This document shows positions 6,775-51,704 of a stretch of 64,000 nucleotides of DNA, piece by piece. The notes under the pieces were generated by a model. It saw only the letters and a list, made by a program, of their open reading frames with translations, did not search any database and was not told the DNA's origin. The first letter of the stretch is position 1, and each line of letters begins with the position of its first letter. The DNA comes from Octopus sinensis. Lineage: Eukaryota. The stretch lies in the NCBI RefSeq assembly GCF_006345805.1, contig NC_043019.1, positions 26,597,360-26,661,359 of the forward strand, written 5' to 3'. The position numbers and the translations under genes are program-made.

Positions 6775-6930
6775 AAATTTTGTCGCCACTGTCTTTCAGC
6801 CAAATTCGGCAGCAGAAGCTTTCCCTTGTTTTGATGATCCGACAATGAAGGCCATCTTTCAATTAACAATCGTTCGAAGAGCTGACCTTATATCTCTCTC
6901 CAACACTGAGAGAAGCCACTCAGAAGACAG
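6775..6930 (+). CDS. Aminopeptidase module 1 exon ([28 protein letters not shown]...)
   Basis: tttttcAG / GTaaat; 156 nt, phase 2-2; homologous to 39741-39899. Confidence 0.9.
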
Positions 6931-11837: not shown

Positions 11838-11858
11838 TAGATAAATAGATAGATGGTT

Positions 11859-11893
<35 letters not shown>

Positions 11894-18103: not shown

Positions 18104-18134
<31 letters not shown>

Positions 18135-25100: not shown

Positions 25101-28100
25101 CTCTGCTGACTTTTTCACCTCAACTTTCTCTCACTCTTTCCTCCGGCGTCTAGCAGTTCACATGTGATGGACCGGTGTATCATCCAGGTGGGGAACCTAT
25201 ACGCCAATGAAATCAGGAAACCGGCCCTTATGAGCCAGGCATGGCTAACAACAATTTCATTAGTTACCCAACTGCAGCAGTATATGCTACCCAACAACAT
25301 AGGCTACCCAACTGCATCATCATCATCGTCGTCGTCGTCGTCGTCGTCATCATCATCATCATCATCATCATCAACATAAACTAATGAGAGCCTCTACATG
25401 ATTGCACAATCTGTTAAAAACAGCAGCCAAATTTTTCCCTCAAATAACACTATACTGTCTTAATAAAAAAAATTAACACACTTGATAGTGTAGTCCTAGA
25501 TACACCATGTCTGACAAAAAGTGATAGACGGACATGGACAGAGCATCTTTCGCTATTAGTCTACTTGTTCAGGGCTGGCCTAGGGATAAACTACTGCCAC
25601 TGCTATCACCACCAATACTATCCCCCCACCACCTTCACCACCACCTCCACCACCCATGGACTTGGGGACAGCAAGAGACCCTCCACATGACCATCCCATA
25701 TATAGCACCAAAATCTTTATCAATTCAAATAATCATCTCAGAAAAGGAAGGACACATTAGCTAGCGTAGTCCTTGGTAGACTGTGTCTAAATGAGAAGAG
25801 ACAGGAAATGATCATAGAATCATAAGTTTGATTATAAGTCAGCTGGATTATCTGACCTGGGGCCAAACAATAACAATTACAAAAAGCACAGCTGCCCTAC
25901 TACCACCGCTACCGCCACCACCCTGACCATACTACCATCATCATCACTATATCACCACCACCATACACCACCACACACTACCTATAACACTACACCACCA
26001 TTACCATCAAACATTGCCTTCACCATCACCACCACCACCACCACCACCACCACCACCCTGACCATACTACCATCATCATCACTATATCACCACCACCACC
26101 ATACACTACCTACAACACTACACCACCACTACCATCAAACATTGCCTTCAGCATCACCACCCTGACCATACTACCATCATCGTCACTATATCACCACCAC
26201 CATACACCACCACACACGACCTACAACACTACACCACCACTACCATCAAACATTGCCTTCACCATCACCACCACCACCACCACACACCACCACACACCAC
26301 CTACAACACTACACCACCACTACCATCAAACATTGCCTTCACCATCACCACCACCACCACCACCATTACCACACTTTCTAACATGTCCATGTTTGCCTCT
26401 GGTACTCTTTTACAGATCCAATAAGTTAGATGTGAACATCTTCCTGAGTCTTCTTGACTATATGAACAAAGAAACTGAGTACTTACCCTGGATGGCTTTC
26501 TTTGGGGCCACTTCTGAACTCTTCAGTTACTCAAGCCAATCTGAGAATCTTCCCACTTATTTGGTATGCTTGGCTTTTGTCTTTATTGTCCACCCATCCA
26601 TTACTGTCTTTATTGTCCATCCGTCAATTTTTGTCTTTATTGTCCATCCATCCATTGTTGTCTTTATTGTCCACCCTTCCATTTTTTTCTTTATTGTCCA
26701 TCCGTCCATTTTTGTCTTTATTGTCATAATTTAAAGAGAAATCATTAATGTTGATGACAATTTCAGTCAGAAAAGGGCAAGGGAGGGAACTTTGAAATTT
26801 AAATGAATTAAAAATTAAATGATGACAAGCTGTGCGAAGTGTGCCTAATGTTTAGCAAGTAAGGGAGATGACTGTGAACATGTTTGAGTCATATTAGACC
26901 TCATCAATGTCATATAGTGGAAACAAGTGGGAACCAGATTTTAGTATGACCTGAGTTGGATCATCAATTTTGCAGTCTGTGGCTGCTTTGAGAGTTTTAC
27001 TTCCATCACTTACTTTTCTAACCCAATTATTTAATTTTTACAGTATTTCTTCCAAGAAAAGATTAAAAATATTTACCAAAAAGTGGCTTGGATTGATCAC
27101 GGCTTGAGTTTGAATGACAGGTAAGGAAAATCAGATTTTCTTTGTTGTATAACTTGGTAAAAGCAAGCAAAATCTCCCATTACACTCAATGATGAGTATC
27201 TTAGTTATTTGAGCAATGGAACTGCCTACTCACTGTACTATAGTAACCGAGTATTCCACATACCCTTGTATGCTTAATGTAATCTCCTCCACCCAAATAT
27301 TGTGTGTGAAATGGTTGGCCCTTTAGTTGCAAATAAAACCTGTCTTGTATTGGTATAATTATACTATAACCAGTCTTGTATAGTTACACTGTTGAAGGTG
27401 GTGGCAAGCTGGCAGAAACGTTAGCACGCTGGGTGAAATGCTTTGTAGTATTTCGTCTGCCGCTACATTCTGAGTTCAAATTCTGCCGAGGTCGACTTTG
27501 GTTTTCATCCTTTCGGAGTTGATAAATTAAGTACTATTTACATACTGGGGTCGATGTAATCGACTTAATCCCTTTGTCTGTCCTTGTTTGTCCCCTCTAT
27601 GTTTAGCCCCTTGTGGACAATAAAGAAATAAGAAACGTTAGCACGCCGGGTGGAATGCTTAGCAGTATTTCATCTGTCTTTATGTTCTGAATTCAAATTC
27701 TGCCAAGGTTGACTTTCATCCTTTAAGGGTTGATAAATTAAGTACCAGTTCCATACTGAGGTTGATCTAATTGACTGGCCCCCCCTCCCTAAAAATTTCA
27801 GGCTTCAAAGAAATCTAAGAAAATGTGACTAGACAGCTGCTCGTTATCCAAAGAAAACGAGTTTCAGGAATACTTCCATCAACGGAAATGACACTGGATA
27901 AAATGTGTAGCTTTGGAAGGGAACAACTTTGAAGGGGATTAAATGCTGAAGTAATAGGTGTTGTAGTTTTGCCGAGCTCTAATTGTGGAGGGAACCTGTG
28001 GAAGGGGTAGTGGGACGAGGTGGTGAAAAAGGAAGTTCAGATGCTGGGACTCACTGAGGAAATGACAAGGGACCAGGAGATGTGGCAATTTGCTGTACTT

Positions 28101-29422
28101 GAAAAGAAGCGTCAAGCTAAGCAAAATCTCTGTCTTCCATATATACAGGCTTGCCCTTTCAGGTGTCAGTGCTGCATAAACACACCTGTGCCAGTTCTGT
28201 GTAAAAACACCTGTGCCAGTGCTGTGGAAACACACCTGTGGCAGTGTTACATAAAAAGCACCCAACCACACTCTGTTAAGTGGTTGGCATTAGGAAGGGC
28301 ACCCAGCTGTAGAAACCATGCCACAACAGACAATGGGAGCCTGGACAGCTCTCAGCTGGCCAGCTCCATGTCAAACCTATTTCTTTACTACCCACAAGGG
28401 GCTAAACACAGAGGGGACAAACAAGGACAGACAAACGGATTATGTCGATTATATCGACCCCAGTGCGTAACTGGTACTTATTTGATCGACCTCGAAAGGA
28501 TGAAAGGCAAAGTCGACCTCGGCGGAATTTGAACTCAGAATGTAGCGGCAGACGAAATACCTCAAAGCATTTAACGTTTCTGCCAGCTCGCCGCCTTCTG
28601 CCAGCTGACCAGCTACATGTCAAACCGTCCAACCCATGCCAGCATGGAAAACAGCGTATTTTTAATGGTGATGATGATGATAATGATGAACATCCGCCCT
28701 GATACTTTTTGACCAGACCTCGTATGCAGCCGGTTGAAGGACTTCCATACATTTTCTATCCACTCAGTTCTATTCTGAAGGATTAGCATGACCTACATTT
28801 AGTCTGGCAAGGTGGGAACAAGAGGACATTGAATGTGTTGCCTTGTGGTATTAGCTCCAATTTTTTTTTGTGGTCTGAGTTCAACTCCTGCTGTGGCCTA
28901 CCTGGCTGGTAGACTTGATTGGCCACCCAGGTTACCCCACTCCCCCACCATCACCACTCGATACTCTAAGGATACTTTTGAGTGAAATCCACCCTGTTGC
29001 AAGCATTTGTATCAGGACTCCAGTTTGAAGATACTCTTCTCCCTCTTTACTCCTCCGCCGCCCCCATGTCCCCACCGTCCTTATAAGTGTCATGACTACC
29101 TTGTCTCCTTCCTGATTAAACAACAAAACCCGAATGTTTCCTCTCTGGTAACAGAACTGTTTCAACAACCCACCCCACCCTACTGTGACCCCGCGCACAC
29201 TTGGTGGTGGTGGTGGTGGTGGTGTTGAGACTCTGATAGTGGCTAGAAATAGCAGGGATTACTTGTCTGACCAATGTATACTGATGCATATTTCTTTCTT
29301 CTAGAATGCTCCAGAATGGAGTCATCAATGAAGCTTGTAGGATGGAACATCCTTCCTGTTTATCAAAAGCCAATCATCTATTCAAAAGATGGAAGACAAA
29401 TCCTAAAGAAAACAAGTGAGTA

Positions 29423-29453: not shown

Positions 29454-31646
29454 TATTATTATCTTCATCATTGTCATCATCATTATCATCATCATCATCA
29501 TCATCATTTAGGCAGCGAGCTGGCAGAATCGTTAGCACACCGGGCGAAATACTTAACGGTATTTCATCTGTTGCTACGTTCTGAGTTCAAATTCCGCCAA
29601 GGTCAACTTTGCCTTTCACCCTTTCGGGGTCGATAACTTAAGTACCAGTTGAATCGGGGGGGGGGGTCAATGCAATCAATTTACCCCACTCTCCTGAAAT
29701 TACATTATATTATTTTCCATCATACTATTAGTTTTGTTTTCATTTTGAAAAGTCAAAATATATTTTGTGGTTTATTATTGTTTAGTGCACCTGTGCTGGT
29801 GACACATAAAGAACACCTTTGGAGGCCTCATGGAGGCAAAATGGTTGTGTTCTTTTTGAGTGTTGGGCCTCATGGAGGCAATGACTGTGACCTTTGGAAT
29901 TATGTTGGCCTCACGGAGGCAAAGTGGCTGAGTTTCTTTTGAGTGTTGGGCCTCACAGAGGCAAAGTGACTGAGTTCTTTTCAAATGTTGGGCCTCACGG
30001 AGGCAAAGTGACTGAGTTCCTTTTGAGCACAGGGTCTCATGGAGGCAAAGTGGCTGAGTTCTTTCGAGTGTTGGGCCTCACAAAGACAATGACTGTGACC
30101 GTTGGAATTATGTTGGCCTAACAGAGGCAAAGTAGCTGAGTTCCAGCAAGCACTGGGCCTCACGGAGGCAAAGTGGCTGAGTTCCTTTTAGAGCACTGGG
30201 CCTCATGGGGGCAAAGTGGCTGAGTTCCAGCAAGCACTGGGCCTCATAGAGGCAAAGTGGCTGAGTTCTTTTTGAGCACTGAGCCTCACAGAGGCAAAGT
30301 GACTGAGTTCCTTTCAAGTGTTGGGCCTCACATAGCAATGACTGTGACCTTTGGAATGATGTTGGCCTCATAGAGGTAATGTGGCTGAGTTCCTTTTGAG
30401 TGTTGGGCCTCATGGAGGCATGACATTATGTCATGCTTGAAAAGAAGACCCATTAAGCCAAGCAAAATTGCAGTCATGGCAGATACCATATCATGCAAAT
30501 TGTCACCCGTACTGGTGGCATGAAAAAGCACCCCGTGGTCATGCAAATGGCACTTGTTCCAGTGGCATGTAAAAGCACCCATTGCACTCTTGGAGTAGTT
30601 GGTGTTAGGAAAGGCATCCAATCATAGAAAACCATGCCAAATCAGACTGGTGTCTGGTGCAGCCTTCTAGCATGCTAGCCCGGTCAAACCATCCGATCTA
30701 TGCCAGCATGGACAACGATGATGATGATGATGATGATGAGGAGGAGGAGGATGAAGACAGCGATGATGATGATAATTATATGTTATACTTTTATTGCATT
30801 TAGCTGTGTTGCAATTATTATTTTCTACTTATTTTGACCAAACTCATTTGATTTCCGACTTAAACAAAAAAATAATTTAGAGACGGCAAAATGAATTCAA
30901 TAGAAATAACTTGGAGGGAACCATGATGGAAATCCTTAAGACTCTCGGGCAACAAACTTTAGAATTTGAAGATTGTCTATTATAAACAATATTTTGAATT
31001 ATTTTTTATACCTGCATTTTCTCTCTGTATCTATCTATCTATCCACCCACCCACCTACCAGTTTCCTGCCTCTCTCTACTCCATCAATCTCTCCTTCTCC
31101 CCTTTCTCTCTCTCTCACTCTATCTCACTCTCTCTCTCTATACAAATTCATAACTCATATCTCCCATGACCCAGCTTATTCTCCACCTCTCTGTACACCA
31201 TTACTCTCATCTTTTAAAAATAATTTAATCAAACTTAAACCCAATACACTGCATATTTCGTCCACAGCACCTGAGACACTCTAGGTAGCATTAAAATACA
31301 CATCATTCTTCCTTTGTTTCTTTTACACATGAAGATGAGGAGGATGCTGGTGGTGGTGATGATGATGATTGTTGTCATAAGTTTTAACAACCTTCAAATG
31401 TTTTTTTAAATATTTTTCTGACATCATTCTTATTGTTTGTTTTTATTCTATTTTTCTGCTTCTAGAATCCCGACTCAATTTTTGAGACAAGTCATGTGTA
31501 TTGGTATCAGACAAGGTGGCACCAGGGATTGTCTGTTTGTCAAAGACCAATTGAAGACACAGCCTGCCTCCATTGCCATTAGGATGCATTTTGCAATAAG
31601 TTGCTCAAAAAAACCCTGGGTTCTTCAAAGGTATGGCTGTTCAATA

Positions 31647-32839: not shown

Positions 32840-34462
32840 TAATAATAATCCTTTCTGCTAAAGGCACAAAGCCTGAAATTTTGGGGGAGGGGACTAGTTG
32901 ATTACATCAACCCCAGTGCGTAACTGGTACTTATTTTATCGACCCTGAAAGGATGAAAGGTGAAGTCGACCTCGGCAGAATTTGAACTCAGAATGTAAAG
33001 ACGGACAAAAACACCCCTAAGTATTTTACCTGGCATGTTAGCGATTCTGCAATCTCATCACCTTACAGGTGCAAAGCATTGATGATGTAACCGTGTATTT
33101 TTAGAACGACATTGCGGGGTTGATGTGAGAGGCCAGATCTGGCCAGCTTGAGCATAAAATAGAATATTCGAACCAGATGTGGTTGCTTTGAATGCTAAAG
33201 TGTTAATATTTGCATATTTTTGCATATTTTTGCATGCGGTTTTTTTCTTTGTTTTTTCTTTTTGCATTGTCCATGCCATCTTTCTTTGCATGTCTTCCGC
33301 ATCTTTCCTGCAGTTTCATCATTTCTTTATTCCTGTCATTTACTCAACCAGCATCTCCTCTATTGTCTTCTAATATTCTGTCTTGTCACCATATTAGCTA
33401 CTTGAATGATATAACCCACTCTGATAACTTCGATATCCGTCTGCTAGTAACTGCTGTCGTACATCTTGCACGGAACCCTTGCAGCACGACTCTTGTTAAG
33501 CGTTTCTTTGCTGACAAATGTGCCACAAACACTTCATTCTTCATCAGTTCCAAGTAAGTAAATACTCTTTACTCTTTACTCTTTACTCTTTTACTTGTTT
33601 CAGTCATTTGACCGCGGCCATGCTGAAGCACCGCCTTTTTTTTAATCGAGCAACTTGACCCCGGGACTTATTCTTTGTAAGCCCAGTACTTATTCTATCG
33701 GTCTCTTTTGTCGAACCGCTAAGTGACAGGGACATAAACACACCAGCATCGGTTGTCAAGCAATGCTAGGGGGACAAACACAGACACACAAACATACACG
33801 CACACACACACACATATATATATATACATATATACGACGGGCTTCTTTCAGTTTCCGTCTACCAAATCCACTCACAAGGTTTTGGTCGGCCCGAGTCCAT
33901 AGTAGAAGACACTTGCCCAAGGTGCCATGCAGTGGGACTGAACCCGGAACCACGTGGTTGGTAAACAAGCTACTTACCACACAGCCACTCCTGCGCCTGG
34001 GACATTTTTTTCACTAAAAACGTTTACTTTGAGGTTGTTTTGTTTTGGGATTTGGTTTGCAAGATTCTTTATGTGAGTTTGTGTGTTGAAGCATGTTTTG
34101 TTGCGTCTGTGGAGGGTCATTCTCTTTTAGTACCTTATTATTTAACACACTCACTGGTAAAGTTTCCACTCATTTACTTATTTATTTTTCCTAAAATTTT
34201 CATTGCATCTTGTAATCTTTTCAATAGTTGTTTTACATTTATACTTGTTTTTTTAAATATTTTTGTTGTTTTTTTTTATTTATTTAATAACATTTCCCTC
34301 TTTTTATTTCTTTCTTTCTTTCTCTCTTTCTGTCTGTCTGTCTGTCTTTCTTTTTTCTTCCTTCCTTCCTTTCTCTCTTTCTTTGTTAACTCCTTCACAA
34401 TCCATAAGTTACTACTACTACTACTACTACTGCTGCTGCTGGCGCCGCTGCCGCCACTACTG

Positions 34463-34788: not shown

Positions 34789-35441
34789 TCACCATAGCTA
34801 CTATTTCTAACAGGTCTAGTGAATGTGTAAAGGTTTCCTTCACTGGTTCATACATACATGAAATATATTTTCCAGCATCCAAGTCAGCTGTATTTTATGC
34901 TATATAGCAATAAACATGTAGTGTAAACATTCAAACATCATCATAATCTTTCCAAATCCAGCTGCATTTCACATGGAGTGTTTGGTACACCAATCCTGTC
35001 TTGGTGTATACGTTGAGTTATCATTTTTGGCTGTAAATTTTGATCTGAATAATTCAAATTGTCTGCCAGAAAATCTGGTAATTCCATTGATTAAAATTAC
35101 AATGTCGGTTCTTCTTTTCCCTTACAGTTACTCATCAGTGCCATGTAAGAATGTGATTAAAGCTGTGAATACAGCAACAGAAATCCAGCATTTTGACAAT
35201 GTAAGTTGCTTTTTAAATTCGTTAACTAATAGTATTGCATTGATGAACATGCAGGAGTGGCTGTGTGGTAAGAAACTTGCTTCCCAGCCACATGGTCCCA
35301 GGTTCAGTTCCACTGTGTGGCACCTTGGACAAGTGTCTTTTATTATAGCCTTTGGATGACCAAAGCTTGTGAGTGGATTTGGTAGACGGAAACTGGAAAA
35401 TGCCAGTTGTATATACATATATATATATATGTGTGTGTGTG

Positions 35442-35540: not shown

Positions 35541-37574
35541 ATATATATATATGTATACACACACACACACACACACATATATATTTGTGTGTGTGTGTCT
35601 GTGTTTGTCCCTCCTCCATCACTTGACAACCGATGCTGGTGTGTTTACATCCCTGTAACTTAGCAGCTCGGTAAAAGAGACTGACTGAATAAGTACTAGG
35701 CTTACAAAGAATAAGTCCTGGAGGCAATTTGTTCGACTAAAGGTGGTACTCCAGCATGGCCGCAGTCAAATGACTGAAACAAGTAAAAGAAAGATATAAA
35801 AGAAAAAAGATAAAAATTTCATTTACTGATGAATCAATTAAATTCATTTTATTGTCTGTGTGTCTAAATGCAGTCAACATTTATATAGGGGTCAATGTGT
35901 GTGTGTGTGTGGGGGGGGGGTGTAATTAAAGTATTTACATGTAATGTCTATATAATAGGCACATGGATGGCTGAGGCGGTAGAGCATCAGGTGAAATTCC
36001 ATCAACACTTGTTGCCTTTCTACCCTTCAGCTATTCTATAGACTTGACGATCCATTCTTTGGTCGGAATCCTGTCCAGGTCTGTGCACAAGATAAACCCA
36101 GGATGGTCATGGCTGAGATTCTCTTGATCATAGGTCTGTTCAATCAAGGTTGACCTGGGGTTAAACAACAACAACAATAGCAACAACAAAACTGCTGGAG
36201 CTAATAAGGATGCCCCTTGCAGTGATGTGACCTGTTAGAAATAACAGTCAAATAGGACCCTAATATCTTTAAAAGAAGGACGGACACATTAGATAATATA
36301 GTCCTAGATACTACTAAAAGACAGGAAATTCTCTTGATCATAGGTCTGTTCAATCAAGGTTGACCTGGGGTTAAACAACAACAACAGCAACAACAAAACT
36401 GCTGGAGCTAATAAGGATGCCCCTTGCAGTGATGTGACCTGTTAGAAATAACAGTCAAATAGGACCCTAATATCTTTAAAAGAAGGACGGACACATTAGA
36501 TAATATAGTCCTAGATACTACTAAAAGACAGGGTAGGTATGCAGTTCTATATTTAAGAGATGAGGAATTATGTACATTATTTACATTCGACGGATATTTG
36601 TCCTCATCTTGTTTGTTGTTAACACAACGTTTCAGCTGATATAATAATAATAATAATAACAACAACAACATTGAAAAATACCTCAGGAACGAGAACCCAG
36701 GTTCGAAATTTCCCCAAGACATCTGAAGAAGGCTGGAGGGTATATCAGCCAGAACATTGTGTTAACAACAAACAAGATGAGGACAAATATCTGTTGAATG
36801 TAAATAATATAAATAATGTAGGATGGGTATGGTTGGAAAGCCTTTGATCACCTGTCTGTTTGAGAGGGCCTTGAGGCTAAATAACAGCAACAAATGGTAT
36901 CATTATTAATTTGTGTGTATGTAACTTTTATTTATGAAACTTTTTTATTTCAGATAAATATTGGTGATGCTGGTAGTATCTTTGAGAGAAAACAAATGAT
37001 AATACATCAAATTAAGGACTCTTGGAGCAAGTATAACCTTGAGAAAGGAGTGGAGGGCATCAAAGAACTGTCTTACAAGTAAGAATTTTTATTTTTTTCC
37101 ATTTTGGTGTATCAGTGGAAGAGAAACTGAGAAAAAATGTATAAATTCTTAAAATTTTTTTTTATAAAGCCAAAACAAGTTATAAGAAAGAATATAAGTT
37201 AATGATTTGTGCTTTTACATTGTACTTCAATATTTTGGGTTTAATTGCTCTTCTTCAGGATACATTGGAATTCTAGGTAAAAACACAAACCATCAACCCT
37301 ATGATCGATGCCAGTGCCACCTGACTGGCTACCATGCTGGTGGCATGTAAAAAGCACCATTCAAGCATGGTCATTGCCAGTGCTGCCTGACTGGCTCCCA
37401 TGCCAGTGACATGTAAAAAGCACCCATTACACTCACGGAATGGTTGGCGTTAGGAAAGGCATCAAGCTGTAGAAACATTGCCAGATTGGATTGGAGCCTG
37501 GTGCAGCCTCCTGGTGTACCAGTCCTCAGTCAAACCGTCCAACCCATGCCAGAATGGGAAGCGGACGTTAAACA

Positions 37575-37607
<33 letters not shown>

Positions 37608-37635
37608 TTGCATTGTTTTGGCTTTATAAGCAAAA

Positions 37636-37672
<37 letters not shown>

Positions 37673-40600
37673 ACGCGCATGGGTGTGTGTGTTTAGGAGC
37701 AAATGTGACTCTGTGGTAAGAAGTACACTTTCCCAGCCCCTGATTTACCTGTTCTTTTGTATGATGATTGTACAATAATTAGTCCTTTTACACTAATTAA
37801 AGATGGAGTTTGACGGTCTTTTTTTTTTCTTTTGTCTTTTTAAACATTCCTTTAGCCTTCCCCACTTCATAAATTTTGTTTGTCTTTTAGGAAGAAGAAA
37901 ACCTTAAGTGCCAAAATGAGACTGCCCAAAGACCTGATTCCTTTGTCATACGATATAAAAGTCCAACCAGAAATTTATGGTGGTGACCCAACAAAATTCT
38001 ACTTCCACGGGACCGTTCAGATGCACATAATATCTCTAAAACCTGTTAGGACTATTACCTTCCATGCAGACAATTTGGAAATTTCAAACTTAACCGTATA
38101 CACAAACAATGAAATATCATCCCGCGTTCCGATTCTGTCCACATCCATTGATAAAGAAAAGCAGATGTTTAACATTCTTCTTGGAACAGAAATTGCTGCC
38201 AATACCAGTGTCACAGTGAAATTAAACTTCAGGGGTAACCTGAAGAAACAACTGAGTGGTCTCTACCTTAGTTCTTATTACAAAAGAGGAAAAGAGATGT
38301 AAGTATTTGTTCCTTCTTTATTCTAAAGAAAAAAATAAATTATTGTTGTTGAAACCCACATCAGCCTTAACAAGGATAACAAATGATAAAAGCCACTCCT
38401 GTTCTAACTATTGTGTCTCTGTTGTACAATGTAAAGGGTTCATTATTTGCATTATTTACATTATTTACATTTGACGGATATTTGCCCTCATCTTGTTTGT
38501 TGTTAACACAACGTTTCGGCTGATATACCTTCCAGCCTTCATCAGGTGTCTTGGGGGAAATTTTGAACCTGGGTTCTCATTTAATGGGTCTGAAGAAGGC
38601 TTGTTAAGATATTACAGCAATGCATGTATTCAGTCCTTGAATTAATATATATGGAAGCACTCCGTCAGTTACGACGACGAGGGTTCCGATTGATCCGAAT
38701 CAATGGAACAGCCTGCTCATGAAATTAACGTGTAAGTGGCTGAGCACTCCACAGACACGTGTACCCTTAACGTAGTTCTCGGAGAGATTCAGTGTGACAC
38801 AGAGAGTAACAAGGCCGGCCCTTTGAAATACAGGTACAACAGAAACAGGAAGTAAGAGTGAGAGAAAGTTGTGGTGAAAGAGTACAGCAGGGATCACCAC
38901 CATCCCCTGCCGGAGCCTCGTGGAGCTTTAGGTGTTTTCGCTCAATAAACACTCACAACGCCCGGTCTGGGAATTGAAACCGCGATCCTATGACCGCGAG
39001 TCCGCTGCCCTAACCACTGGGCCATTGCGCCTCCACGAATTAATATCTAGACCAACGCATAACCATGCATTATCAATCCAGTGGGTTACAAGCTCTCATA
39101 AGTGAACCACTATAATGGATTTCAACTGATCAATTACTCATATCGAATCAATTGGGTTACAAAGTATTTGTGTATTATTTGCTGGCTTGGTGGGGTTACA
39201 GGATGTTCCACTGAACAAGTGGGCTACAAAGACAAGTAACCCAGTGGGTTACACCAATCTGTGGGTTAGAACATGTATATGAGCATGTATGTGTGTATGA
39301 GTGTATATGTGTGTGTATATATAAGTATGTGTGGGTATATATGTGTGTGTATATATATGTGTGTATGTGTGTATATGTATATGTGTGCATGTATGTATGA
39401 ATGTGTGTGTGATTATATGTGTATGTTTGTGTGTGTGTATGTATATATATATATATGTGTGGGTGTATGTATATATATGTGCGTGTGTGCATGTATATAT
39501 ATATGTGTGTGTGTTTGTGCATGTATATATTGTATTACTTGTTTGAAATGACACAATAGGTTACAGTGGCTTACAATGGTACCATTTGTTATTTATTTAC
39601 TAAGACAATGAGTCACAGAATATAACAATGTAGGTTTTCAAGACATTAGATCGTCATCTTCAAATCTCTGTCTCAAAAAACTTGAAAAACCTCTCCAGGT
39701 GAAATAAATTCCAAAAGACACTATTTCCATTCTGTTTCAGATATTTGGCTACAACCCAGTTTGAACCAACGTCTGCCCGAAAAGCCTTCCCCTGTTTTGA
39801 TGAACCTCAGATGAAGGCCAAATTCAATGTGAAGATTGTCAGAAAGAAGCATTACAAGTCCATATCTAACACCAATGTGAAGAGCACGGTGAAACTGGAG
39901 TAAGGTTTTTTACCATTTTCTCAAATAGTTGCCATTATATATGATGATGATGATGACGATGATGATGACGATGACGACGACGACGTCGACGATCACCATC
40001 ATCATCGTCATTTAACATCTGCTTTCCATGCTGGCATAAGTTGGACGGTTTGACTGAGGACTGGCAAGCCAGGAAGCTGCACCAGGCTCCAATCTGATTT
40101 GACAAGGTTTCTACAGCTGGAAGCCCTTCCTAATGCCAACCACTCTGAGAGTGTAGTGGGTGCTTTTTATGTGCCACCATCATGGGAGCCAGTCAGGCAA
40201 CACTGGCATTGGCCATGCTTGAATGGTGCTTTTTACATGGTCGTCAGACAGAGAGCCACCTGCTACTCACCATTGTCCTAGCAGGTGACCCAAGCAATTA
40301 AGATTTGAATTGATGTTGCTGCTATATCAATAACACCATGTGGCTTGTGTTGACCAATAGCAGAACAATATCTAAAAGCCATCTTGGATTTGTCTCATTT
40401 GGTCTCTACAAGCCTGATGCGACAGGTCCATTTCATGAGCCTTTAAGGTCCATTTTATGAAGCCATACAACATTATCTTCATCATCATCATTTAATGTCT
40501 GTTTTCCATGCTGGCATGGGTTGGACGGTTTGACAGGAGCTGGCAAGGTTTCTATGGCTGGATTCCCTTCCTAATGCCAACCACTTTACAGAGTGTACAG

Positions 40601-42511
40601 GATGTTCTTACAAAGCATTAGTATGGGTGCATTGATATTGGATCAGCATGAGTGCCTTTTATGTGGCACCAGCATCCACGAGCTTGCATATACTCAGCTG
40701 GAGAAGGATGTAGCGGACATGCCTGTGTGACAGGACAACCTTGATTTTAGTTAGCTTGACATGTCTTCTCAAGCACGACAAACCACCAGGAGTCTCGGTC
40801 CTCTGTCATCCCCTTTATGAGGTCCAGTGTCTTAAGATCCTTTCTCACCACTTCATCCCATGTCTTCCTGGGTCTACCCCTTCCACATGTTCCCTCCACA
40901 TGTGTAACATAGTAACATAATATATAGAGCATTTCAATAATGTGAGAAAAGTACGCTTCAGTATTCATCACTGAATATAGAAACGTATGTAACAGATGAA
41001 ATAAAGAAATACTAAATTCATCCCCATTATTTTCCTTTTTTCTCTCAGTATAAGGCGTTTGTCATCTTCGTCTGCTGCAGATGACCTGGCTTTGCTTAAT
41101 GAATCCATAGGAACTTTTATTATTATATACACCTGTGACTTCATGGATCTTTATGATTTATGAACTTGGTTATGACATAATCCACAGTTACAACATAATC
41201 CACAGTTACAACATAATCCACAGTGCTCCCGAAACAGCTGTCAAGAAACTATTACATAACTCCTTTTGTTTATTTTGTATTCTTTATTCAATACCCTCTA
41301 TTTTGTATTTCATGTAAATATTTGCATTAAGTCAGTCTGTTTTTATCTGCCTTTCTACTTATATATATGCTAGTATTGAACAGTGAGAAGGAGCATTCAA
41401 CATTGCATTGGTAGATAAATTTTCTTTATTTGTGGATCAACAAGGCAACCAATGGTTTTATGTATGAAAGGTCTCCACAGTTGTTCAAATGAACAACTTG
41501 GGAATGTTGGTACTTATCTCTATTGTGGAGATCTCTTCCAAATGAAACCTCTGGTTGCCTTGTTAATCCATAAATAAAATATATACATATATATATGAGC
41601 ATGTATGTGTGTATGTGTATATATGTGTGTGTGTGTGTGTGCATTTGTGTATGTATGGATGTGTGTATATATAATTATGTGTGGGTATATGTGTGTGTGT
41701 ATATATATGTGTGTGTATGTGTATATGTGTGCATGTATGTATGTTTGTGTGTATATGTATGTGTGTGTGATTATATGTGTATGTATGTGTGTATGTATAT
41801 ATATATATATATGTGGGTGTATGTATAGATATGTGCGTGTGTGTATGTATGTATATATATGTGTGTGTGTTTGTGTATGGATATATATGTGTGTTTGCAC
41901 GTATATATATATGTATATGTGTGTGTATGTGTATGTGTGTGTATGTATATATATATGTGTGTGTGTATGTATATATATGTGCGTTTATGTGTATGTGTAT
42001 GTATATATGTGTGTGTGTGTGTGTGTGTGTCTGTGTGTATATATATATACATATCACCTTGACCACCTTGACCGACCAGTCCATCGGGCGTCCATTTGAC
42101 ACCGCTGGACACAGCATGCTGTCCACTCCTCTCTGGATCTGCGCGATCCAGATATATATATACATATATATAGATATAATATGCTTGTAGTAATGGCTGT
42201 AAAAATGTCACGTACCTCACACACTCTTCTGCTGTCTTCTACGTATTTGCAGGGACGACTGGATCGAAGACACATACCACACAACCCCTAAAATGTCCAC
42301 CTACCTCCTCGCCTTCATCGTCTGTGACTTCAGTTACACGTCACAAATGGGTTCCAGCAACAAAACACTGGTGAGACCTTTCTCTTAGTTTCCTCATCAA
42401 TTCCACCACCACCACCACCACCAACCACCACCACCAACCACCACCACCACCACCACCACCACAACAACAACAACAACAACAACCACCACCACCACCACCA
42501 CCACAACCACC

Positions 42512-42543
<32 letters not shown>

Positions 42544-43775
42544 CAACCACCAACCACCACCACCACCAACCACCACCACCACCAACCACCACCACCACCA
42601 CCACCACCACCACCAACCACCACGACCACGACCACCACCACCACCACCACCACCAACCACACCACCACCACCACCACCACAACCACCACCAACCACCACC
42701 ACCACCACCAACCACCACCACCAACCACCACCACCACCACCACCATCACTACCATTTAAGAGATGAGGAATTATGTACATTATTTGTATTATTTACATTT
42801 GACGGATATTTGTCCACATCTTGTTTGTTGTTAACACGTTTCGGCTGATATACCCTCAAACTTTCATCAGGTGTCTTGGGGAAATTTCGAACTTGTGTTC
42901 TCATTCCTAAGGTATATTTCGATCTTCTTCTTCTTCTTCTTCCTCCTCCTCCTCGTCTTCGTCTTCTTCTTCTTCTTCTTCTTCTTCCTCCTCCTCCTCC
43001 TCCTCCTCCTCTTCATCTTCTTCTTCTTCTTCTTCTTATTATTATTATTATCATTATCATTATTATTATATTATTATTATTATTATTCAGGTCATTGCCT
43101 GGAATCGAACTCAGAATCTTGGGGGTTAGTAGCCTGTGCTCTTAAACCACTAGAAACAAGATGACGACAAATATCCGTCAAATGCAAATAATATAAATGT
43201 TTGACTTTACATTATATTCTACATTGACTTGTTTGTTAAAAAGCACAGGAATCGTTGTATTTCTTTTCATTTACTGATCTCTTTATTCAGGTTGGCGTTT
43301 GGGTCAGGGAAGATTTTATGAATGAAACTAGCTTTGCTTTAGAACGAGCAAGGACTGTGCTGGAATTTTATGCAGGCTATTTTCAGTCTCCATTTCCTCT
43401 GGAGAAACTCGGTAAGAAATTAAAATCAAACTCTGTTTTTTATTCTATCAAGTTTAATTACAGTTTTTATCATGTGTAAACCTAGTTATAGATAGAACAA
43501 ATACGCTGTTTCTCGGCATGTCATAAGAGGCAGCTTAAAAGGGTGAGTGACAAGAAGAGCGTCCAGCTGTGAGACATTGCCACAGGGAAAGGTGGCAATG
43601 GGTAAGGTGTAAAAGAGTGATGGTGGTGGAGGTGATGGTTATGAAGGTGGTGGTGGGGGTGAATAGTTGATCATAGCAAATTGAATTCTTTGAGAGAATT
43701 TATTATATAGTTGCTGAGAAAAGAAAACTTAAAGTAAACCCAAGATGTAGTATTTGAGCTCTGACAAGTCAACAG

Positions 43776-43819
<44 letters not shown>

Positions 43820-43971
43820 ATAATAATAATAATAATAATAATAAGAAGAAGAAGAAGAAGAACAACAACAACAACAATCCTTTCTACTATGGGCACAGGA
43901 CCAGAAACTTAGGAAAATGGTGGCTAGTCAATTACATCAACCCCAGTGATCCTGGAAGGATGAAAAGCAAA

Positions 43972-44005
<34 letters not shown>

Positions 44006-45465
44006 GGTGGTGGTGGTGGTGGTGGTGGTGCTGCTGCTGCTGCTGCTGCTGCCGCCGCCCTGAAGACATAGCATTTGTACTACAGGGCCAGGTTGGTATC
44101 AGCCAGGTTGGTATCAAAAGGGTTAATTATAATAATGAAAATAGTAATAATTAATGATGATAATAATAGAAGGATGATTTCTAACAGTGACAAAAAAGGT
44201 TGTAGATCTGAAAGGAAGGTGTTAAATCAGTTAATGGGCTCCAACTTAAAACCGTGTAGTTGTTGAGCAACATGTTAAACTTGCAGTCATCTCTTAGCTT
44301 GTTTGACAGCATCGGTGTTGAAATTCTCATCAGCAACATAATAAGAGGGTGAGTCAAAAAGTAATGCCATTTTGTTTAGGACAGGTATAATTACCAACAC
44401 AGGAACATATGTCGTACATCAAAATGAAGCTGGTTCTCTATGGATCACATCTCTTCTCAGCATAATCACCGTTTCTCTCAATAGCAATGTTCCACCTTCA
44501 AATAAGAGCATGTGTCCCTGCCCCGTAAAATTCTGTTGACTGTTCTTTGAGCCACTTCTTCACTACAGTTTTCACTTCCTCGTCACTGGACTATCATCAT
44601 CACTGGACTATCATCTCTTCAGCCCCATGAAAGAGGGTTTGAGAGGCAAACATTATTCCGGTGATGAGGAAGTGAAAACTGTAGTGAAGAAGTGGCTCAA
44701 AGAACAGTCAACAGTCAGTGTCCCAGCATGCTCCAGCATAGCCATAGGTCCATGATTTGTGACCTGTTATGATGGATTTCAAAGATCTTTTGTCTTTCTT
44801 GACACAATCAGGAAGATCCTTTGCAGCTGAAACTTGATCTCCTTTTTGAGATGACCCCACTCTGCACACTATATTTCTAAGAACTGCCATGAACAACAGA
44901 AGGGAGCAAGAACATGCAAGGTCAATCTGTGCAAAGTGATGTACTTTAGCTGTGTTACCATAGCAACAGTCCTGACACTTTTTGATCAGACCTTCTATTT
45001 TGGAAAAGAAAGGTTTTCAGTACATGAAAGCATGTAATATGGACCCAATTTTGCTTAAATGATTCAGGATGGGTCGTTTTTCAGAGACCTTTTTTGGTAA
45101 AAAGTGCGCCTTATATGCTATCAAATATGGTAACTTACCATAATTCTCTTTCTTTCTCTCTCTCTCAGATCTGATAGGTATCCCAGATTTCGCAGCTGGA
45201 GCCATGGAGAACTGGGGCCTGATAACTTACAGGGAGACAGCACTGCTCAATGATCCCTTAATGAACTCAATATCTCAATCTGAACGGGTCACATTAGTGG
45301 TGGCTCATGAGCTTGCACATCAGGTGAGTACCTCAGGGTATCATAGACAGATATGGAGGAATACAATGTACACATACACACATACATATACATTTGTATC
45401 GACATATATATGTATGCATGTATGTATGTGTGTGCATATTATATATTTATGTATGTAATCTTTTA

Positions 45466-45504
<39 letters not shown>

Positions 45505-45831
45505 TCAATATAGGGAGGCAAAAAAATTTTGTAGAATTCATTTGGTCAGATATTGGCGAGGCATGGACGAGAATGCCTCGTGAAAAATATCTGTTCCGAT
45601 TTGGCTATTCCTTACTGATGAATCTAAGGGCCTATGGTAGATTGGCTTGATTTAATTTAATCAGGTTAGTTTACCATTAAACAGTAGAAGAAACGGTGCA
45701 TCGTATAAGGAATTCAGGGTAAATGTTTTTTAATTTTCTCCTGGTTTACGGAATTAATGTTATTTTGCGGTTGAAGCTTTTTGGCTGTTATTTCTAGTGG
45801 GTGAATGGCCTATTATGGCCGTTCCTTGATT

Positions 45832-45885
<54 letters not shown>

Positions 45886-48800
45886 AATATATATATATAT
45901 ATACACACACATACATACACCCGTGCTCATAGACATACACACCTATGTATGTATACAAATATATATTTATGTACCTCACCATTGCTTGACAGCTCATGTT
46001 AGCTTGTTTATGGCCCTGTAACTTTGCAGTTCAGCAAAGGTGACTGATGAAATAACTACCCAGCTTATTCTATCAAAATAGAAAAAAAAATTCTGTGGTT
46101 GATTTGCTTAAGTAAACCCTTGAAGGCTGAGCCCCTGCATGGCTGCAGTCTATGATTGAAATGAAAAAAGATATGCTCTGTCCACATGGACCTGTAACCA
46201 TGAAGCAGACATGTAGCCCTCCGTCTAGCAAAGTACATGTGAACATCCATCTAAGGCATCAGATCAGGACTAATTTATACAATGTTCAATTAGTGTCTAT
46301 ATGTTATATTAAACTTTGGCAAGTACAGTAAAATTGTGCTTTGCTGAGGAGGTTAACATAAAACTAAAACATGTGAAGAGTTATCTTCCATGCCAGATAC
46401 ATGAAAATAATATTACTAATTGGTTATACTGTTTGTTTGTTTTTTTCCATGCATAAATATTTTTAATTAACATATTAAGTGTTCGCTGATTTTAACATGT
46501 TAATTAGTTTTTTGATTATTGTTTCGATATGGATAATTATTTCATTTTGAAATACTTTCTCTTTTGTTATGCCAATAAATATAAAACCTTATCTACTTAA
46601 TTATCCCTCCATCATTATTTCAGAAGATGAAAGCAATGCTTCATTGATAAGGCTTGAATAAGGCAAAAAAAAAAAAAACTATCTTGAATAAGGCAAAAAA
46701 AACAAAAAAAAAACTATCATTTTTTTTTTTGCCTTATTCAAGCCTTATCATCTCTTTTGTTTTATACATTTTTTTATATAACCATTTACAAATCTTTGTT
46801 TGTTGTTTGTGTTTCTTTCAGTGGTTTGGAAATTTGGTAACCATGTGTTGGTGGAATGATCTCTGGCTCAATGAAGGATTCGCAACTTATATTTCCTATT
46901 TTGGAATAGAACACGCATCAAAAGATCCAAAAACAGTCAGTGAAAACTTTTCTTTTTTTTTTTCTCTTCTTCTCTTTCAATCAAATTCTTTTTGAAAACC
47001 AAGAAGGAATCAAACTCTTTTTCAAAAATACAGCTTTTTGGTGGTCTTATTCATGCTGAGCACCAAACAGATATTTGCATTGAACCAGATAGAGTGGGCT
47101 GCGAAAACAAACGAAGGAACCAAAGACAATTTCTGCATGACAGGTCCTTTTGCTTAGCCCCAGGTCAGGTCTGACTGAGAATACCTCCGATCAGATGGTT
47201 TCTAGCCATGACCATCCCATCCCATCCCATCCCATTCAATTTTCTGCATTAGAAATAACATTATGAAATGTGTTTTTCCTTTGTATAGGAACTGCAGCAG
47301 CCCCTATTTCTACTCGATATTATCGATAACATTCAATATAACAAATCCTTTTGTCTTTAATTCTTTCTTTATACTTGTACATTATATAATCCTTAAGCTC
47401 AATATTAGTAGCCATTCCCTAGTTTATGAAAAAAATACAAAAATCCTTGTATAGAACCATATGCTTCACAGTTCCAGTGACACGGTATTTGGCTGTTGTG
47501 TGCATGCTCACATGTCCAAGATAGGAAGCTCTATGCTAGGGAAAGAGTGCACTGTGGTTTACACAGTGCCGCTCCTGGTGTGCTGGTGGAAGGTAGTGTT
47601 TCTTTTTGACTCTACCTGTGTTGTGCTTAAAAATGTGTTTATATTCTTGAATGTGATAAAATGTAGAATTAGATTATTATCCTGCTTCCAGCTTCAGTGT
47701 CGCTGCCAGGATTTGAAAAATAGGGCAGATTTTCCTCCTTTATTTTGTGATTTAGGTGGGATTTTGGAAAAACAAGGGGGAATTCGTGGCAGTGTTCAGT
47801 GAACAAATTAAACACACTGCCCGGCAGTGGCTAAAACGCAAACCAATCAAGTTTATGTGTAAATATTCTTTTTATATGTTTGTTTCCTTTTACACAATAT
47901 TAAAACAACGGATAAAAATTTTCTGAAGCAGCAACCCCACTGGTTTTATCTACAAGCTGCAGCTTCCATCTACATTGCATTCTTCTGGGGTCGATAAAAT
48001 AAAGTACCAGTCAAGTTTCTACCTTATGTCTTCACATCAACAAATGGCAAATAATGATTTCTTCAGCAATTTCTATTGGCCTTAACATTGGAATGTTTGT
48101 GTGAAACTACAAAGATGGTCTCCTGTTGCTATCCTACAAGGGATTCTTGCATGACCCCACTTTACTAGCTAGGGTAAATTCTGAGAAAGAGGGAAAGAGA
48201 GAGGGGAATTGTTTCTAGTACATATTTGACTGGGAACTTATTTATTGATTCGAAAACTGATGAGCATGAAAGTTCAAGTTGACCTGAGTAGAATTTGAAC
48301 TCAGAGCTCATGGGAAAATATTGTTGAGGTTTTTTTTTTGTTTAATTTTTGTTTTTTATCTTTGACAGTTTGATTATTTTGTCATTGACACCATCCATAT
48401 AGCCCTGGAATCGGATGGTTCTTCAGCATCTCATCCATTGAATGTTCCAATCAGGAATCGACATGACATTATGTCTGCCTTTGATGACATCAGCTATAAT
48501 AAGGTAACGACTTCTGACTCCTTATTTGGTTATAGAGTAGAATTTATTTGAAAGGGTTAAATGAACACAATTAAAGACCCTTAGATTTATTTAGTGTATG
48601 TTATATGTGTATATATACTGTATACTGTATGTAAGGGTAAAAGAGCTCCTTTGGTCATGAATGACCATGGGATGGCACCTAGAAAGTCCCCCGCCAAGGC
48701 ACAAGTCCAGGCAAGATTGTTTATGGAAGACCAGCAGTCACCCGTGCATGCCAGTCTCCCCTTTCTACACCATAATATGTCCACAGGGTAAAGGGTTAAG

Positions 48801-49277: not shown

Positions 49278-49314
<37 letters not shown>

Positions 49315-51651: not shown

Positions 51652-51704
<53 letters not shown>

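What the first reader, a model, noticed from the sequence alone, without database searches (positions are those of the whole stretch)
36954..38298. Two complete M1 aminopeptidase modules fused in one reading frame
Seen: the last module-1 exon ends in phase 2 (TAC AA|GTAAGA) and the next acceptor (37891) resumes in phase 2. This gives ...[19 protein letters not shown] with no stop. Module 2 has no signal peptide or anchor, yet has many NxS/T sequons. The 812-bp gap is mostly repeats, leaving little room for a promoter and signal exon. Both modules share intron positions and phases, and many exon lengths (118, 114, 66, 66, 56, 148 nt), while the proteins are visibly divergent. Known: vertebrate ANPEP/ENPEP/ERAP proteins have one module. 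Inference: an old intragenic duplication yielding a protein of more than 1400 aa with two modules, possibly cut at the tetrabasic linker.
Basis: partly seen in the sequence, partly recalled or inferred. Interest (0 to 1): 0.8.

Follow-up and report, generated by a model that had tools for sequence, protein, structure and literature searches.

The report
Octopus two-module M1 aminopeptidase gene
The junction is a real intron inside one octopus gene whose membrane-anchored protein carries two M1 aminopeptidase units in a row; this gene model is already in RefSeq, and similar tandem proteins are predicted in many invertebrates.

Summary
Exon 36954-37078 ends in phase 2 and exon 37891-38298 starts in phase 2, giving ...[20 protein letters not shown] rebuilt 33 plus-strand exons (6775-62534), all AG/GT, giving a 1387-aa open frame.

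That frame matches Octopus sinensis XP_029650204.1 at 1335 of 1335 aligned residues. The only difference is one skipped cassette exon. Isoform X1 (XP_029650203.1) is 1798 aa. So the fused model is already annotated.

The window holds residues 174-1560 only, so neither module is complete in it.

The same junction appears in models from O. bimaculoides, O. vulgaris and Argonauta hians. Four independent Sepia esculenta RNA-seq contigs carry an unbroken 1827-codon ORF with both modules.

Each module groups with its counterpart across octopods and decapodiforms, so the duplication predates that split. There is one hydrophobic anchor, at the N-terminus.

- Module 2 is a canonical M1 enzyme.
- Module 1 is divergent: AGMEN, zinc ligands kept, catalytic Tyr replaced by Ile in Octopus.

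The KKKK linker and the Met before RLP occur only in Octopus, so cleavage or an internal start is unsupported. I had no octopus RNA evidence.

The finding is correct but already known, and of low to moderate interest.

The parts
6775..6930 (+). Module 1, first exon present in the window (156 nt, phases 2/2), encoding [22 protein letters not shown]... It is the homologue of module-2 exon 39741-39899.
   Evidence: tblastn of P0122 and splice optimisation.
7979..8096 (+). Module 1 exon, 118 nt, phases 2/0. Homologue of 42253-42370, which is also 118 nt.
9828..9945 (+). Module 1 exon, 118 nt, phases 0/1.
11310..11518 (+). Module 1 catalytic exon, 209 nt, phases 1/0. It carries AGMEN (a variant of GAMEN) and HEVIH.
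12517..12630 (+). Module 1 exon, 114 nt, phases 0/0, encoding [19 protein letters not shown] with the third zinc ligand Glu.
13683..13781 (+). Module 1 exon, 99 nt (its module-2 counterpart is 135 nt). It ends in ...AINIQ, where the catalytic Tyr of M1 enzymes is replaced by Ile.
14976..15041 (+). Module 1 exon, 66 nt, phases 0/0.
15256..15321 (+). Module 1 exon, 66 nt, phases 0/0.
16961..17109 (+). Module 1 exon, 149 nt, phases 0/2.
22205..22284 (+). Module 1 exon, 80 nt, phases 2/1.
23085..23206 (+). Module 1 exon, 122 nt, phases 1/0 (start of ERAP1_C, ...GFYRVNYD...).
24738..24793 (+). Module 1 exon, 56 nt, phases 0/2.
26416..26563 (+). Module 1 exon, 148 nt, phases 2/0.
27044..27120 (+). 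Module 1 exon, 77 nt, phases 0/2.
29305..29415 (+). Module 1 exon, 111 nt, phases 2/2.
31466..31630 (+). Module 1 exon, 165 nt, phases 2/2.
33398..33553 (+). Module 1 cassette exon, 156 nt, phases 2/2. It is present in isoform X1 and skipped in isoform X2 of O. sinensis.
35128..35200 (+). Module 1 exon, 73 nt, phases 2/0.
36954..37078 (+). Last exon of module 1, 125 nt, phases 0/2, encoding INIGDAGS...GIKELSY + AA. The donor is AA|GTAAGA.
   Evidence: The length and the GT donor are conserved in congener contig L001.
37079..37890 (+). Inter-module intron, 812 nt, phase 2. About 37179-37679 is a lineage-specific insertion: a SINE-like repeat at 37308-37606, (ATG)10 at 37575-37605 and (TG)16 at 37640-37671. 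There is no credible signal or anchor exon.
   Evidence: The orthologous intron in L001 is about 385 nt.
37891..38298 (+). First exon of module 2, 408 nt, phases 2/2. It encodes the linker (K)KKKTLSAKM and then [12 protein letters not shown]..., the start of Peptidase_M1_N.
39741..39899 (+). Module 2 exon, 159 nt, phases 2/2.
42253..42370 (+). Module 2 exon, 118 nt, phases 2/0.
43291..43411 (+). Module 2 exon, 121 nt, phases 0/1.
45169..45323 (+). Module 2 catalytic exon, 155 nt, phases 1/0, carrying GAMEN and HELAH.
46822..46935 (+). Module 2 exon, 114 nt, phases 0/0, encoding [19 protein letters not shown] with the third zinc ligand.
48369..48503 (+). Module 2 exon, 135 nt, phases 0/0. It ends in ...FDDISYNK, so the catalytic Tyr is present.
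53170..53235 (+). Module 2 exon, 66 nt, phases 0/0.
54369..54434 (+). Module 2 exon, 66 nt, phases 0/0. It is missing from the O. bimaculoides model.
56060..56229 (+). Module 2 exon, 170 nt, phases 0/2.
57961..58070 (+). Module 2 exon, 110 nt, phases 2/1.
58529..58656 (+). Module 2 exon, 128 nt, phases 1/0.
60459..60514 (+). Module 2 exon, 56 nt, phases 0/2.
62387..62534 (+). Module 2 exon, 148 nt, phases 2/0, and the last one in the window. The remaining 238 residues are encoded beyond base 64000.

Best explanation
Bases 37079-37890 are an ordinary phase-2 intron inside a single gene of Octopus sinensis. RefSeq lists its products as XP_029650203.1 (isoform X1, 1798 aa) and XP_029650204.1 (isoform X2, 1746 aa).

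Shown: the gene encodes a protein with one N-terminal hydrophobic segment followed by two complete M1 aminopeptidase modules. Each module is Peptidase_M1_N, Peptidase_M1 and ERAP1_C. A roughly 10-residue linker ([10 protein letters not shown]) joins them.

Inferred: it is a type II membrane glycoprotein with both modules outside the cell or in the lumen. This explains why module 2 has sequons but no signal of its own.

Shown: the C-terminal module 2 has every catalytic hallmark of the family (GAMEN, HELAH-18-E, Tyr).

Inferred: module 2 is the working exopeptidase.

Shown: the membrane-proximal module 1 keeps the three zinc ligands and the Glu of the exopeptidase motif. It has AGMEN instead of GAMEN and evolves faster. 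In Octopus it has lost the transition-state Tyr (Ile, next to a 12-residue deletion).

Inferred: module 1 is probably weakly active or a non-catalytic partner.

Shown: the architecture arose by a tandem duplication older than the octopod-decapodiform split.

Inferred: the upstream copy lost its stop, and the downstream copy lost its anchor exon, so its first ectodomain exon is now spliced to the upstream copy.
For: Gene model and identity:
- 33 AG/GT exons give an uninterrupted 1387-aa frame across the junction.
- There are 0 mismatches in 1335 aligned residues to XP_029650204.1.

The same junction in independent models:
- O. bimaculoides XP_014776693.1 / A0A0L8H0V2.
- O. vulgaris CAI9739507.1. 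That annotation fragments the locus, but not at this point.
- Argonauta hians GAB1610746.1, which reads ...KELSYDKKKILSASKRLPQD with no Met.

Conservation in a congener (genomic contig L001):
- It keeps both exon lengths (125 and 408 nt), the GT donor and the acceptor.
- It loses the read-through TAA.
- dN/dS across the two exons is 0.24.

Transcript evidence:
- Four Sepia esculenta RNA-seq contigs from four SRA runs are at least 99.95% identical.
- Each has a complete 1827-codon N-M1-C-N-M1-C ORF, an in-frame stop two codons upstream of the ATG, and UTRs.
- The species assignment of SRR20545812 comes from PMC10466719.
- A second decapodiform transcript, L003, encodes 1820 aa.

Orthology of the modules:
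- The module-1 and module-2 clades each have 97% bootstrap support.
- Reciprocal BLAST gives 37% (module 1 to module 1) and 48% (module 2 to module 2), against 26-31% between modules.

Other points:
- There is a single hydrophobic segment, at residues about 19-50, in six two-module proteins.
- Pfam counts two stretches of each domain.
- The intron holds no credible signal exon. The only hydrophobic candidates are translated microsatellites inside the lineage-specific insertion.
Against: - I had no RNA evidence from Octopus itself. The protein collection returned only a genomic contig for a junction-spanning query.
- The RefSeq and other models are predictions, and predictors are known to fuse tandem paralogs (PMC3927612, listed).
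- The O. vulgaris annotation splits the locus into four models.
- In Octopus species an ATG sits one codon before RLP, and an ATTAAA lies at 37796. Minor single-module isoforms therefore cannot be excluded.
- The activity states of the two modules are inferred from motifs only.
Confidence: 0.9

Rival explanations
1. The locus holds two tandem paralogous genes. Module 1 ends at the TAA that overlaps the GTAAGA, and module 2 starts at the ATG of AKMRLPKD. The fused models would then be gene-prediction or read-through artefacts.
For: - Read-through gives ...ELSYK-stop.
- A Met lies directly before the RLP motif in four Octopus sequences.
- Predictors often fuse tandem paralogs (PMC3927612, listed).
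- I had no octopus junction reads.
Against: - The stop is trivial, because 11 of 12 phase-2 donors give one. It is absent in congener L001, whose donor is GTATGA.
- The Met is absent in Argonauta (K), Sepia (W) and L003 (P).
- Module 2 would lack any signal although it carries 10-11 sequons.
- Sepia mRNAs carry both modules in one ORF in four independent assemblies.
- Phase compatibility and exon lengths are conserved.
- The module pair is inherited as a unit across cephalopods.
Confidence: 0.04
2. The locus is one gene, but the precursor is cut at the KKKK linker by a proprotein convertase. This would release a soluble module 2 and leave module 1 on the membrane.
For: KKKK sits exactly between the last helix of module 1 and the RLP start of module 2. 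It is conserved in O. sinensis, O. bimaculoides, O. vulgaris and the L001 species.
Against: - The basic cluster is not conserved in other cephalopods: Argonauta has DKKK, Sepia has KKHLKK and L003 has QQDNNETITKSP.
- KKKK has no Arg, whereas furin-type sites need R-X-K/R-R (my knowledge).
- Two-module proteins of Haliotis, Solemya and insects have non-basic linkers.
Confidence: 0.08
3. The fused mRNA is the main product, but Octopus also makes single-module isoforms. An anchored module 1 alone would come from intron retention or polyadenylation after 37078. A cytosolic module 2 alone would come from an internal start at Met918.
For: - TAA immediately follows the donor.
- ATTAAA lies at 37796.
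- The Met is conserved within Octopus.
- The gene already shows alternative splicing, in the cassette exon 33398-33553.
Against: - None of these features is conserved outside Octopus, and the TAA is not conserved even within the genus.
- No such isoform is in RefSeq for this cluster.
Confidence: 0.1

Closest known systems
Octopus sinensis RefSeq proteins XP_029650203.1 ('leucyl-cystinyl aminopeptidase-like isoform X1', 1798 aa) and XP_029650204.1 ('thyrotropin-releasing hormone-degrading ectoenzyme-like isoform X2', 1746 aa)
   Same: It is the same gene. The window translation is identical over 1335 of 1335 aligned residues, and the exon junction ELSY|KKKK is the same.
   Different: Nothing differs except that the window covers only residues 174-1560. 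The RefSeq names are similarity-derived and do not mention the two-module architecture.
Cephalopod orthologues: O. bimaculoides XP_014776693.1 / A0A0L8H0V2 (1692 aa), Argonauta hians GAB1610746.1, and Sepia esculenta transcripts (1827 aa; L004-L007)
   Same: - Each has one N-terminal anchor, then a divergent module 1 (AGMEN, HExxH-E), then a canonical module 2.
- Module-to-module orthology holds across them.
   Different: - Linker sequences differ.
- Sepia and L003 keep the catalytic Tyr in module 1, whereas Octopus has Ile.
- The O. bimaculoides model lacks one 66-nt exon and its C-terminus.
Vertebrate single-module M1 ectoenzymes (aminopeptidase N, ERAP1/2, IRAP/LNPEP, aminopeptidase A, TRH-DE)
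   Same: - Each module aligns end to end with ERAP1, IRAP and APN structures. E-values are 1e-129 for module 2 and 1e-70 for module 1.
- The topology is type II, as in APN, IRAP and TRH-DE (my knowledge).
   Different: The vertebrate enzymes have one module per chain, and APN and its relatives pair as homodimers (my knowledge). Here two diverged modules sit on one chain.
Somatic angiotensin-converting enzyme (M2 family), the textbook metallopeptidase with two tandem homologous catalytic domains on one membrane-anchored chain (my knowledge)
   Same: An internal duplication of a whole zinc-peptidase ectodomain, with the two copies divergent in sequence.
   Different: - It belongs to an unrelated peptidase family.
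- It is a type I protein with a C-terminal anchor.
- Both ACE domains are active, whereas octopus module 1 lacks the catalytic Tyr.
Predicted multi-module M1 proteins of other invertebrates
   Same: They show head-to-tail repeats of N-M1-ERAP1_C with short linkers and a single anchor or signal.
- Two modules: Haliotis, Mercenaria, Ruditapes, Mya, Solemya, Batillaria, Plakobranchus, Asterias, rotifers and Timema.
- Three to five modules: Hymenoptera such as Anthophora, Eretmocerus and Chelonus.
   Different: - At least some look like independent duplications. Haliotis modules are 60% identical and sister to each other, and the insect modules form their own clades.
- Most are unverified gene predictions.

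Membership tests
MEROPS/Pfam M1 aminopeptidase family, module 2 | Domain order Peptidase_M1_N (PF17900), Peptidase_M1 (PF01433), ERAP1_C (PF11838) | tested here: met
   Pfam E-values are 2e-45, 1e-78 and 6e-24. ERAP1_C is cut off by the end of the window and is full-length in P0391. The module is colinear with ERAP1 residues 51-664.
MEROPS/Pfam M1 aminopeptidase family, module 2 | GXMEN exopeptidase motif, HEXXH-18-E zinc site and the catalytic Tyr | tested here: met
   The motifs are [35 protein letters not shown] and [11 protein letters not shown].
MEROPS/Pfam M1 aminopeptidase family, module 1 | Domain order Peptidase_M1_N, Peptidase_M1, ERAP1_C | tested here: met
   All three families score above their cut-offs (63, 113.5 and 171 bits). 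The N domain is cut off by the start of the window. The module aligns to human APN residues 149-823.
MEROPS/Pfam M1 aminopeptidase family, module 1 | HEXXH-18-E zinc ligands | tested here: met
   The motif is [24 protein letters not shown], with the same spacing as in module 2.
MEROPS/Pfam M1 aminopeptidase family, module 1 (as an active enzyme) | Canonical G-X-M-E-N motif and the transition-state Tyr | tested here: not met
   The motif is AGMEN: Gly and Ala are swapped and the Glu is kept. Tyr is replaced by Ile (AINIQG against ISYNKG), next to a 12-residue deletion. Sepia and L003 module 1 keep the Tyr. Module 1 is therefore a family member by fold but probably not a normal enzyme in Octopus.
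Type II single-pass membrane ectoenzyme (as APN, IRAP, TRH-DE) | One N-terminal uncleaved hydrophobic anchor and no other hydrophobic segment, with sequons in the ectodomain | tested here: met
   A hydropathy scan gives one peak at residues about 19-50 in P0278, P0122, P0279, P0147, P0124 and P0128. There are 7 and 11 sequons in the two modules. The anchor exon itself lies outside the window. Topology was not tested experimentally.
Single transcription unit (as opposed to tandem paralogous genes) | A spliced mRNA that joins the last exon of module 1 to the first exon of module 2 | tested here: inconclusive
   This is met for the orthologue in Sepia esculenta and a second decapodiform, which have continuous ORFs in RNA-seq contigs. 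For Octopus I have only gene models and conserved splice sites and phase. No octopus reads were available.
Proprotein-convertase-processed precursor | A conserved R-X-K/R-R or dibasic cleavage site in the linker | tested here: not met
   KKKK occurs only in Octopus and contains no Arg. Other cephalopods have non-conserved linkers.

The most novel reading that the evidence does not exclude
Tandem-module M1 aminopeptidases may be an old, widespread and so far undescribed enzyme architecture of invertebrates. They are predicted in molluscs, echinoderms, rotifers and arthropods. Seven full-text searches found no paper on them. They would be the M1 counterpart of two-domain somatic ACE.

In octopods the membrane-proximal module has become a pseudo-peptidase: zinc site kept, catalytic Tyr lost. 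It could act as a built-in partner for the active distal module, in the way the second subunit does in the APN homodimer. It could also act as a substrate-capturing or regulatory unit.
Probability: 0.35. Interest if true: 0.45.

Novelty: already known. Interest (0 to 1): 0.3.

Why it matters
- **For annotation:** the locus should stay as one gene. The O. vulgaris annotation currently breaks it into four models. The O. bimaculoides model lacks an exon. The RefSeq names differ between isoforms (LNPEP-like and TRH-DE-like) and hide the architecture.
- **For biology:** this is a clean, transcript-backed case of a whole roughly 880-residue peptidase ectodomain being duplicated and fused. One copy stays canonical. 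The other diverges and, in octopods, loses a catalytic residue. That makes a natural system for studying how pseudoenzyme modules arise next to their active paralogue.
- **As a discovery:** it is modest, because the protein is already in public databases.

Tried and rejected
1. A junction-spanning 177-aa protein query returned one genomic hit only. The tool appears to list hits of about the query's length, so short queries cannot reveal long fused models.
I used the single 135-aa exon instead, which worked well.
3. A search for a module-1 copy of the 408-nt first exon within bases 1-6774 found nothing. Module 1 is truncated by the window, not divergent there.
4. Comparing module 1 with module 2 through stop-to-stop ORFs was swamped by SINE-like repeats.
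5. I treated the TAA after the donor as a possible true stop and rejected it. It is a general property of phase-2 GTAAG/GTGAG donors, seen at 11 of 12 here, and it is absent in the congener.
6. A scan of the intron for an ATG-initiated, phase-2 signal or anchor exon gave only translated microsatellites: poly-Met and CVCV.
7. The first Biopython bootstrap tree timed out. I redid it with numpy distances. That tree cannot resolve whether the cephalopod duplication is shared with other molluscs, because module 1 sits on a long branch.
8. Seven literature searches found no description of multi-module M1 aminopeptidases. One of them identified SRR20545812 as Sepia esculenta.
9. Pfam on intronic ORFs gave only weak C2H2 hits.

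Full report
**The observation**

The window is AT-rich and repeat-rich eukaryotic DNA. At the stated coordinates the sequence reads ...GAA CTG TCT TAC AA|gtaagaat... (exon end 37078) and ...ttgtcttttag|G AAG AAG AAA ACC TTA AGT GCC AAA ATG AGA CTG CCC... (exon start 37891). Joining 36954-37078 to 37891-38298 gives [63 protein letters not shown]... with no stop.

**Gene model**

- tblastn with M1 fragments placed all hits on the plus strand, in two series: 6755-12660 and 37916-53238.
- With the O. bimaculoides protein P0122 as guide, I optimised every donor and acceptor pair.
- This gave 33 exons from 6775 to 62534, all AG...GT. They translate to 1387 residues without a stop.
- Homologous introns in the two modules have identical phases all along.
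- The inter-module intron is phase 2 on both sides.

**Completeness within the window**

- No counterpart of the 408-nt first N-domain exon exists in bases 1-6774.
- The first module-1 exon in the window starts in phase 2 at residue 174 of the full protein.
- The last module-2 exon ends at 62534, which is residue 1560 of 1798.
- Pfam agrees. Module 1 matches Peptidase_M1_N only from profile position 117. Module 2 matches ERAP1_C only to position 98 of 318.
- Neither module is therefore complete in the window, although both are complete in the gene.

**What the gene is**

A full HMMER search with the 135-aa exon (window:37892-38296) returned long multi-module proteins as the best hits. A long-query search then gave P0278 at 100% coverage.

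P0278 is XP_029650204.1, 'thyrotropin-releasing hormone-degrading ectoenzyme-like isoform X2' of Octopus sinensis. Its cluster also holds XP_029650203.1, 'leucyl-cystinyl aminopeptidase-like isoform X1', 1798 aa. My reconstruction differs from X2 only by the 156-nt exon 33398-33553, which X2 skips. The other 1335 residues show 0 mismatches, and X1 contains that exon. O. vulgaris proteins differ at several residues.

**Is the fusion real or a prediction artefact?**

Predictors do fuse tandem paralogs, so I looked for independent evidence.

1. **A congener genomic contig (L001, Logan SRR11869384)** contains both exons.
   - The exon lengths (125 and 408 nt), the GT donor and the acceptor are conserved.
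   - The donor there is AA|GTATGA, so the read-through stop is not conserved.
   - The intron is about 385 nt.
   - dN/dS over the two exons is 0.24.
2. **The TAA in the window is trivial.** 11 of 12 phase-2 donors of this gene give an immediate in-frame stop, because GTAAG or GTGAG in phase 2 reads xxG TAA/TGA.
3. **Other gene models cross the junction.**
   - O. bimaculoides XP_014776693.1 / A0A0L8H0V2 does so.
   - Argonauta hians GAB1610746.1 reads ...KELSYDKKKILSASKRLPQD, without the Met.
   - O. vulgaris CAI9739507.1 does so, even though that annotation breaks the locus into four models.
4. **Transcripts.**
   - The 1827-aa protein P0279 is encoded on 17 Logan contigs of 6-7 kb.
   - I read four of them (L004-L007, from four SRA runs). 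They are at least 99.95% identical.
   - Each holds one uninterrupted 1827-codon ORF with the Pfam order N-M1-C-N-M1-C, an in-frame stop two codons before the ATG, and UTRs.
   - SRR20545812 is a Sepia esculenta larval RNA-seq run (PMC10466719).
   - A second decapodiform transcript, L003, encodes 1820 aa and is 67% identical to Sepia.
5. **Orthology.**
   - In an NJ tree, module 1 of Octopus, Argonauta and L003 forms one clade and module 2 forms another, each with 97% bootstrap.
   - With Sepia added, BLAST gives 37% and 35% for module 1 to module 1, 48% and 46% for module 2 to module 2, and 26-31% across modules.
   - The pair has therefore been inherited together since before the octopod-decapodiform split.
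6. **Topology.**
   - The full proteins have one hydrophobic segment, at the N-terminus, and none near the linker.
   - Module 2 carries 10 sequons in the window and 11 overall, so it needs the upstream anchor to reach the secretory pathway.
   - The intron offers no credible signal exon. The only hydrophobic candidates are translated (ATG)n and (TG)n inside an insertion of about 500 nt that the congener lacks.

The remaining gap is that I had no Octopus RNA reads.

**How it probably works**

Module 2 aligns colinearly with ERAP1, IRAP and APN (E about 1e-129). It has GAMEN, HELAH-18-E and the catalytic Tyr in [11 protein letters not shown].

Module 1 aligns with human APN at E about 1e-69.
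- It keeps HEVIH-18-E and the Glu of the exopeptidase motif.
- It reads AGMEN.
- Opposite the catalytic Tyr it has Ile (AINIQG), next to a 12-residue deletion. Its exon there is 99 nt against 135 nt in module 2.
- Sepia and L003 keep the Tyr (LAYEES).

From what is known of M1 enzymes, loss of this Tyr cripples catalysis (my knowledge). I therefore infer an active distal module and a weak or non-catalytic proximal module in Octopus.

Module 1 is not decaying. It has no stops in 19 exons and is 90% identical to O. bimaculoides module 1. The last-exon comparison indicates purifying selection.

**Cleavage idea**

KKKK is conserved only within Octopus. Argonauta has DKKK, Sepia has KKHLKK and L003 has QQDNNETITKSP. 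It lacks the Arg that furin-type enzymes require (my knowledge). I rate cleavage as unsupported.

**Wider context**

Two-module M1 proteins are predicted in the following groups:
- gastropods: Haliotis, Batillaria, Plakobranchus;
- bivalves: Mercenaria, Ruditapes, Mya, Solemya;
- sea stars;
- rotifers;
- many insects and crustaceans.

Hymenoptera have proteins with three to five modules. Haliotis modules are 60% identical and sister to each other, and the insect modules form their own clades. Several duplications therefore look independent.

Seven full-text searches found no paper that describes this architecture.

**Verdict**

The object is an already annotated gene, and its architecture is common in invertebrate proteomes. 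It is ordinary as a discovery, with some residual interest in the uncharacterised enzyme class and in the degenerate proximal module.

Noticed in passing
window 33398-33553: This 156-nt exon (phases 2/2, 52 aa in the ERAP1_C domain of module 1) is a cassette. It is present in O. sinensis isoform X1 and skipped in X2, and skipping keeps the frame.
   Followed up: partly
window 13683-13781, with L004-L007 and L003: Octopus module 1 has lost the catalytic Tyr (Ile, with a 12-residue deletion), while Sepia and another decapodiform keep it. AGMEN instead of GAMEN is shared by module 1 in Octopus, Sepia and L003.
   Followed up: partly
window 54369-54434: The O. bimaculoides model XP_014776693.1 lacks this 66-nt exon ([22 protein letters not shown]) and the protein's C-terminus. 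This is likely a model or assembly defect.
   Followed up: no
whole locus (O. vulgaris CAI9739506-CAI9739509): The O. vulgaris annotation splits the orthologous locus into four models of 755, 323, 654 and 628 aa. None of the breaks is at the module boundary, and the 323-aa model crosses it.
   Followed up: partly
window 49300-51667: A tandem duplication of about 1186-1187 nt lies inside the 48503-53170 intron. The compared 300-nt and 281-nt blocks are 100% identical. It is either very recent or an assembly artefact.
   Followed up: partly
window 37308-37606 and, for example, 17870-18105, 28278-28666, 30568-30718, 59444-59513: Copies of one SINE-like repeat are scattered through the introns. 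About 45% of the window has another copy within the window.
   Followed up: no
window 21100-21339 and 17202-17943: There are two intronic ORFs. One has two weak C2H2 zinc-finger matches. The other, of about 240 aa, looks by eye like the tail of a retroelement ORF but has no Pfam hit. Both are probably transposon remnants.
   Followed up: partly
window 62000-64000: GC falls to 25% here. Asn/Lys-rich ORFs (for example 63703-63993) have no significant Pfam match. The nature of this block is unknown.
   Followed up: partly
P0127, P0130, P0132, P0149, P0180: Hymenopteran predicted proteins carry three to five tandem M1 modules (2623-4087 aa), with a signal peptide and a C-terminal hydrophobic tail. 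Modules 1 to 3 are orthologous between Anthophora and Eretmocerus.
   Followed up: partly
tool behaviour: the search for homologous proteins listed hits whose length was close to the query's length. A 164-aa query gave only hits shorter than 290 aa, and a 1387-aa query gave hits of about 940-2400 aa. Short queries can therefore miss long annotated proteins.
   Followed up: no
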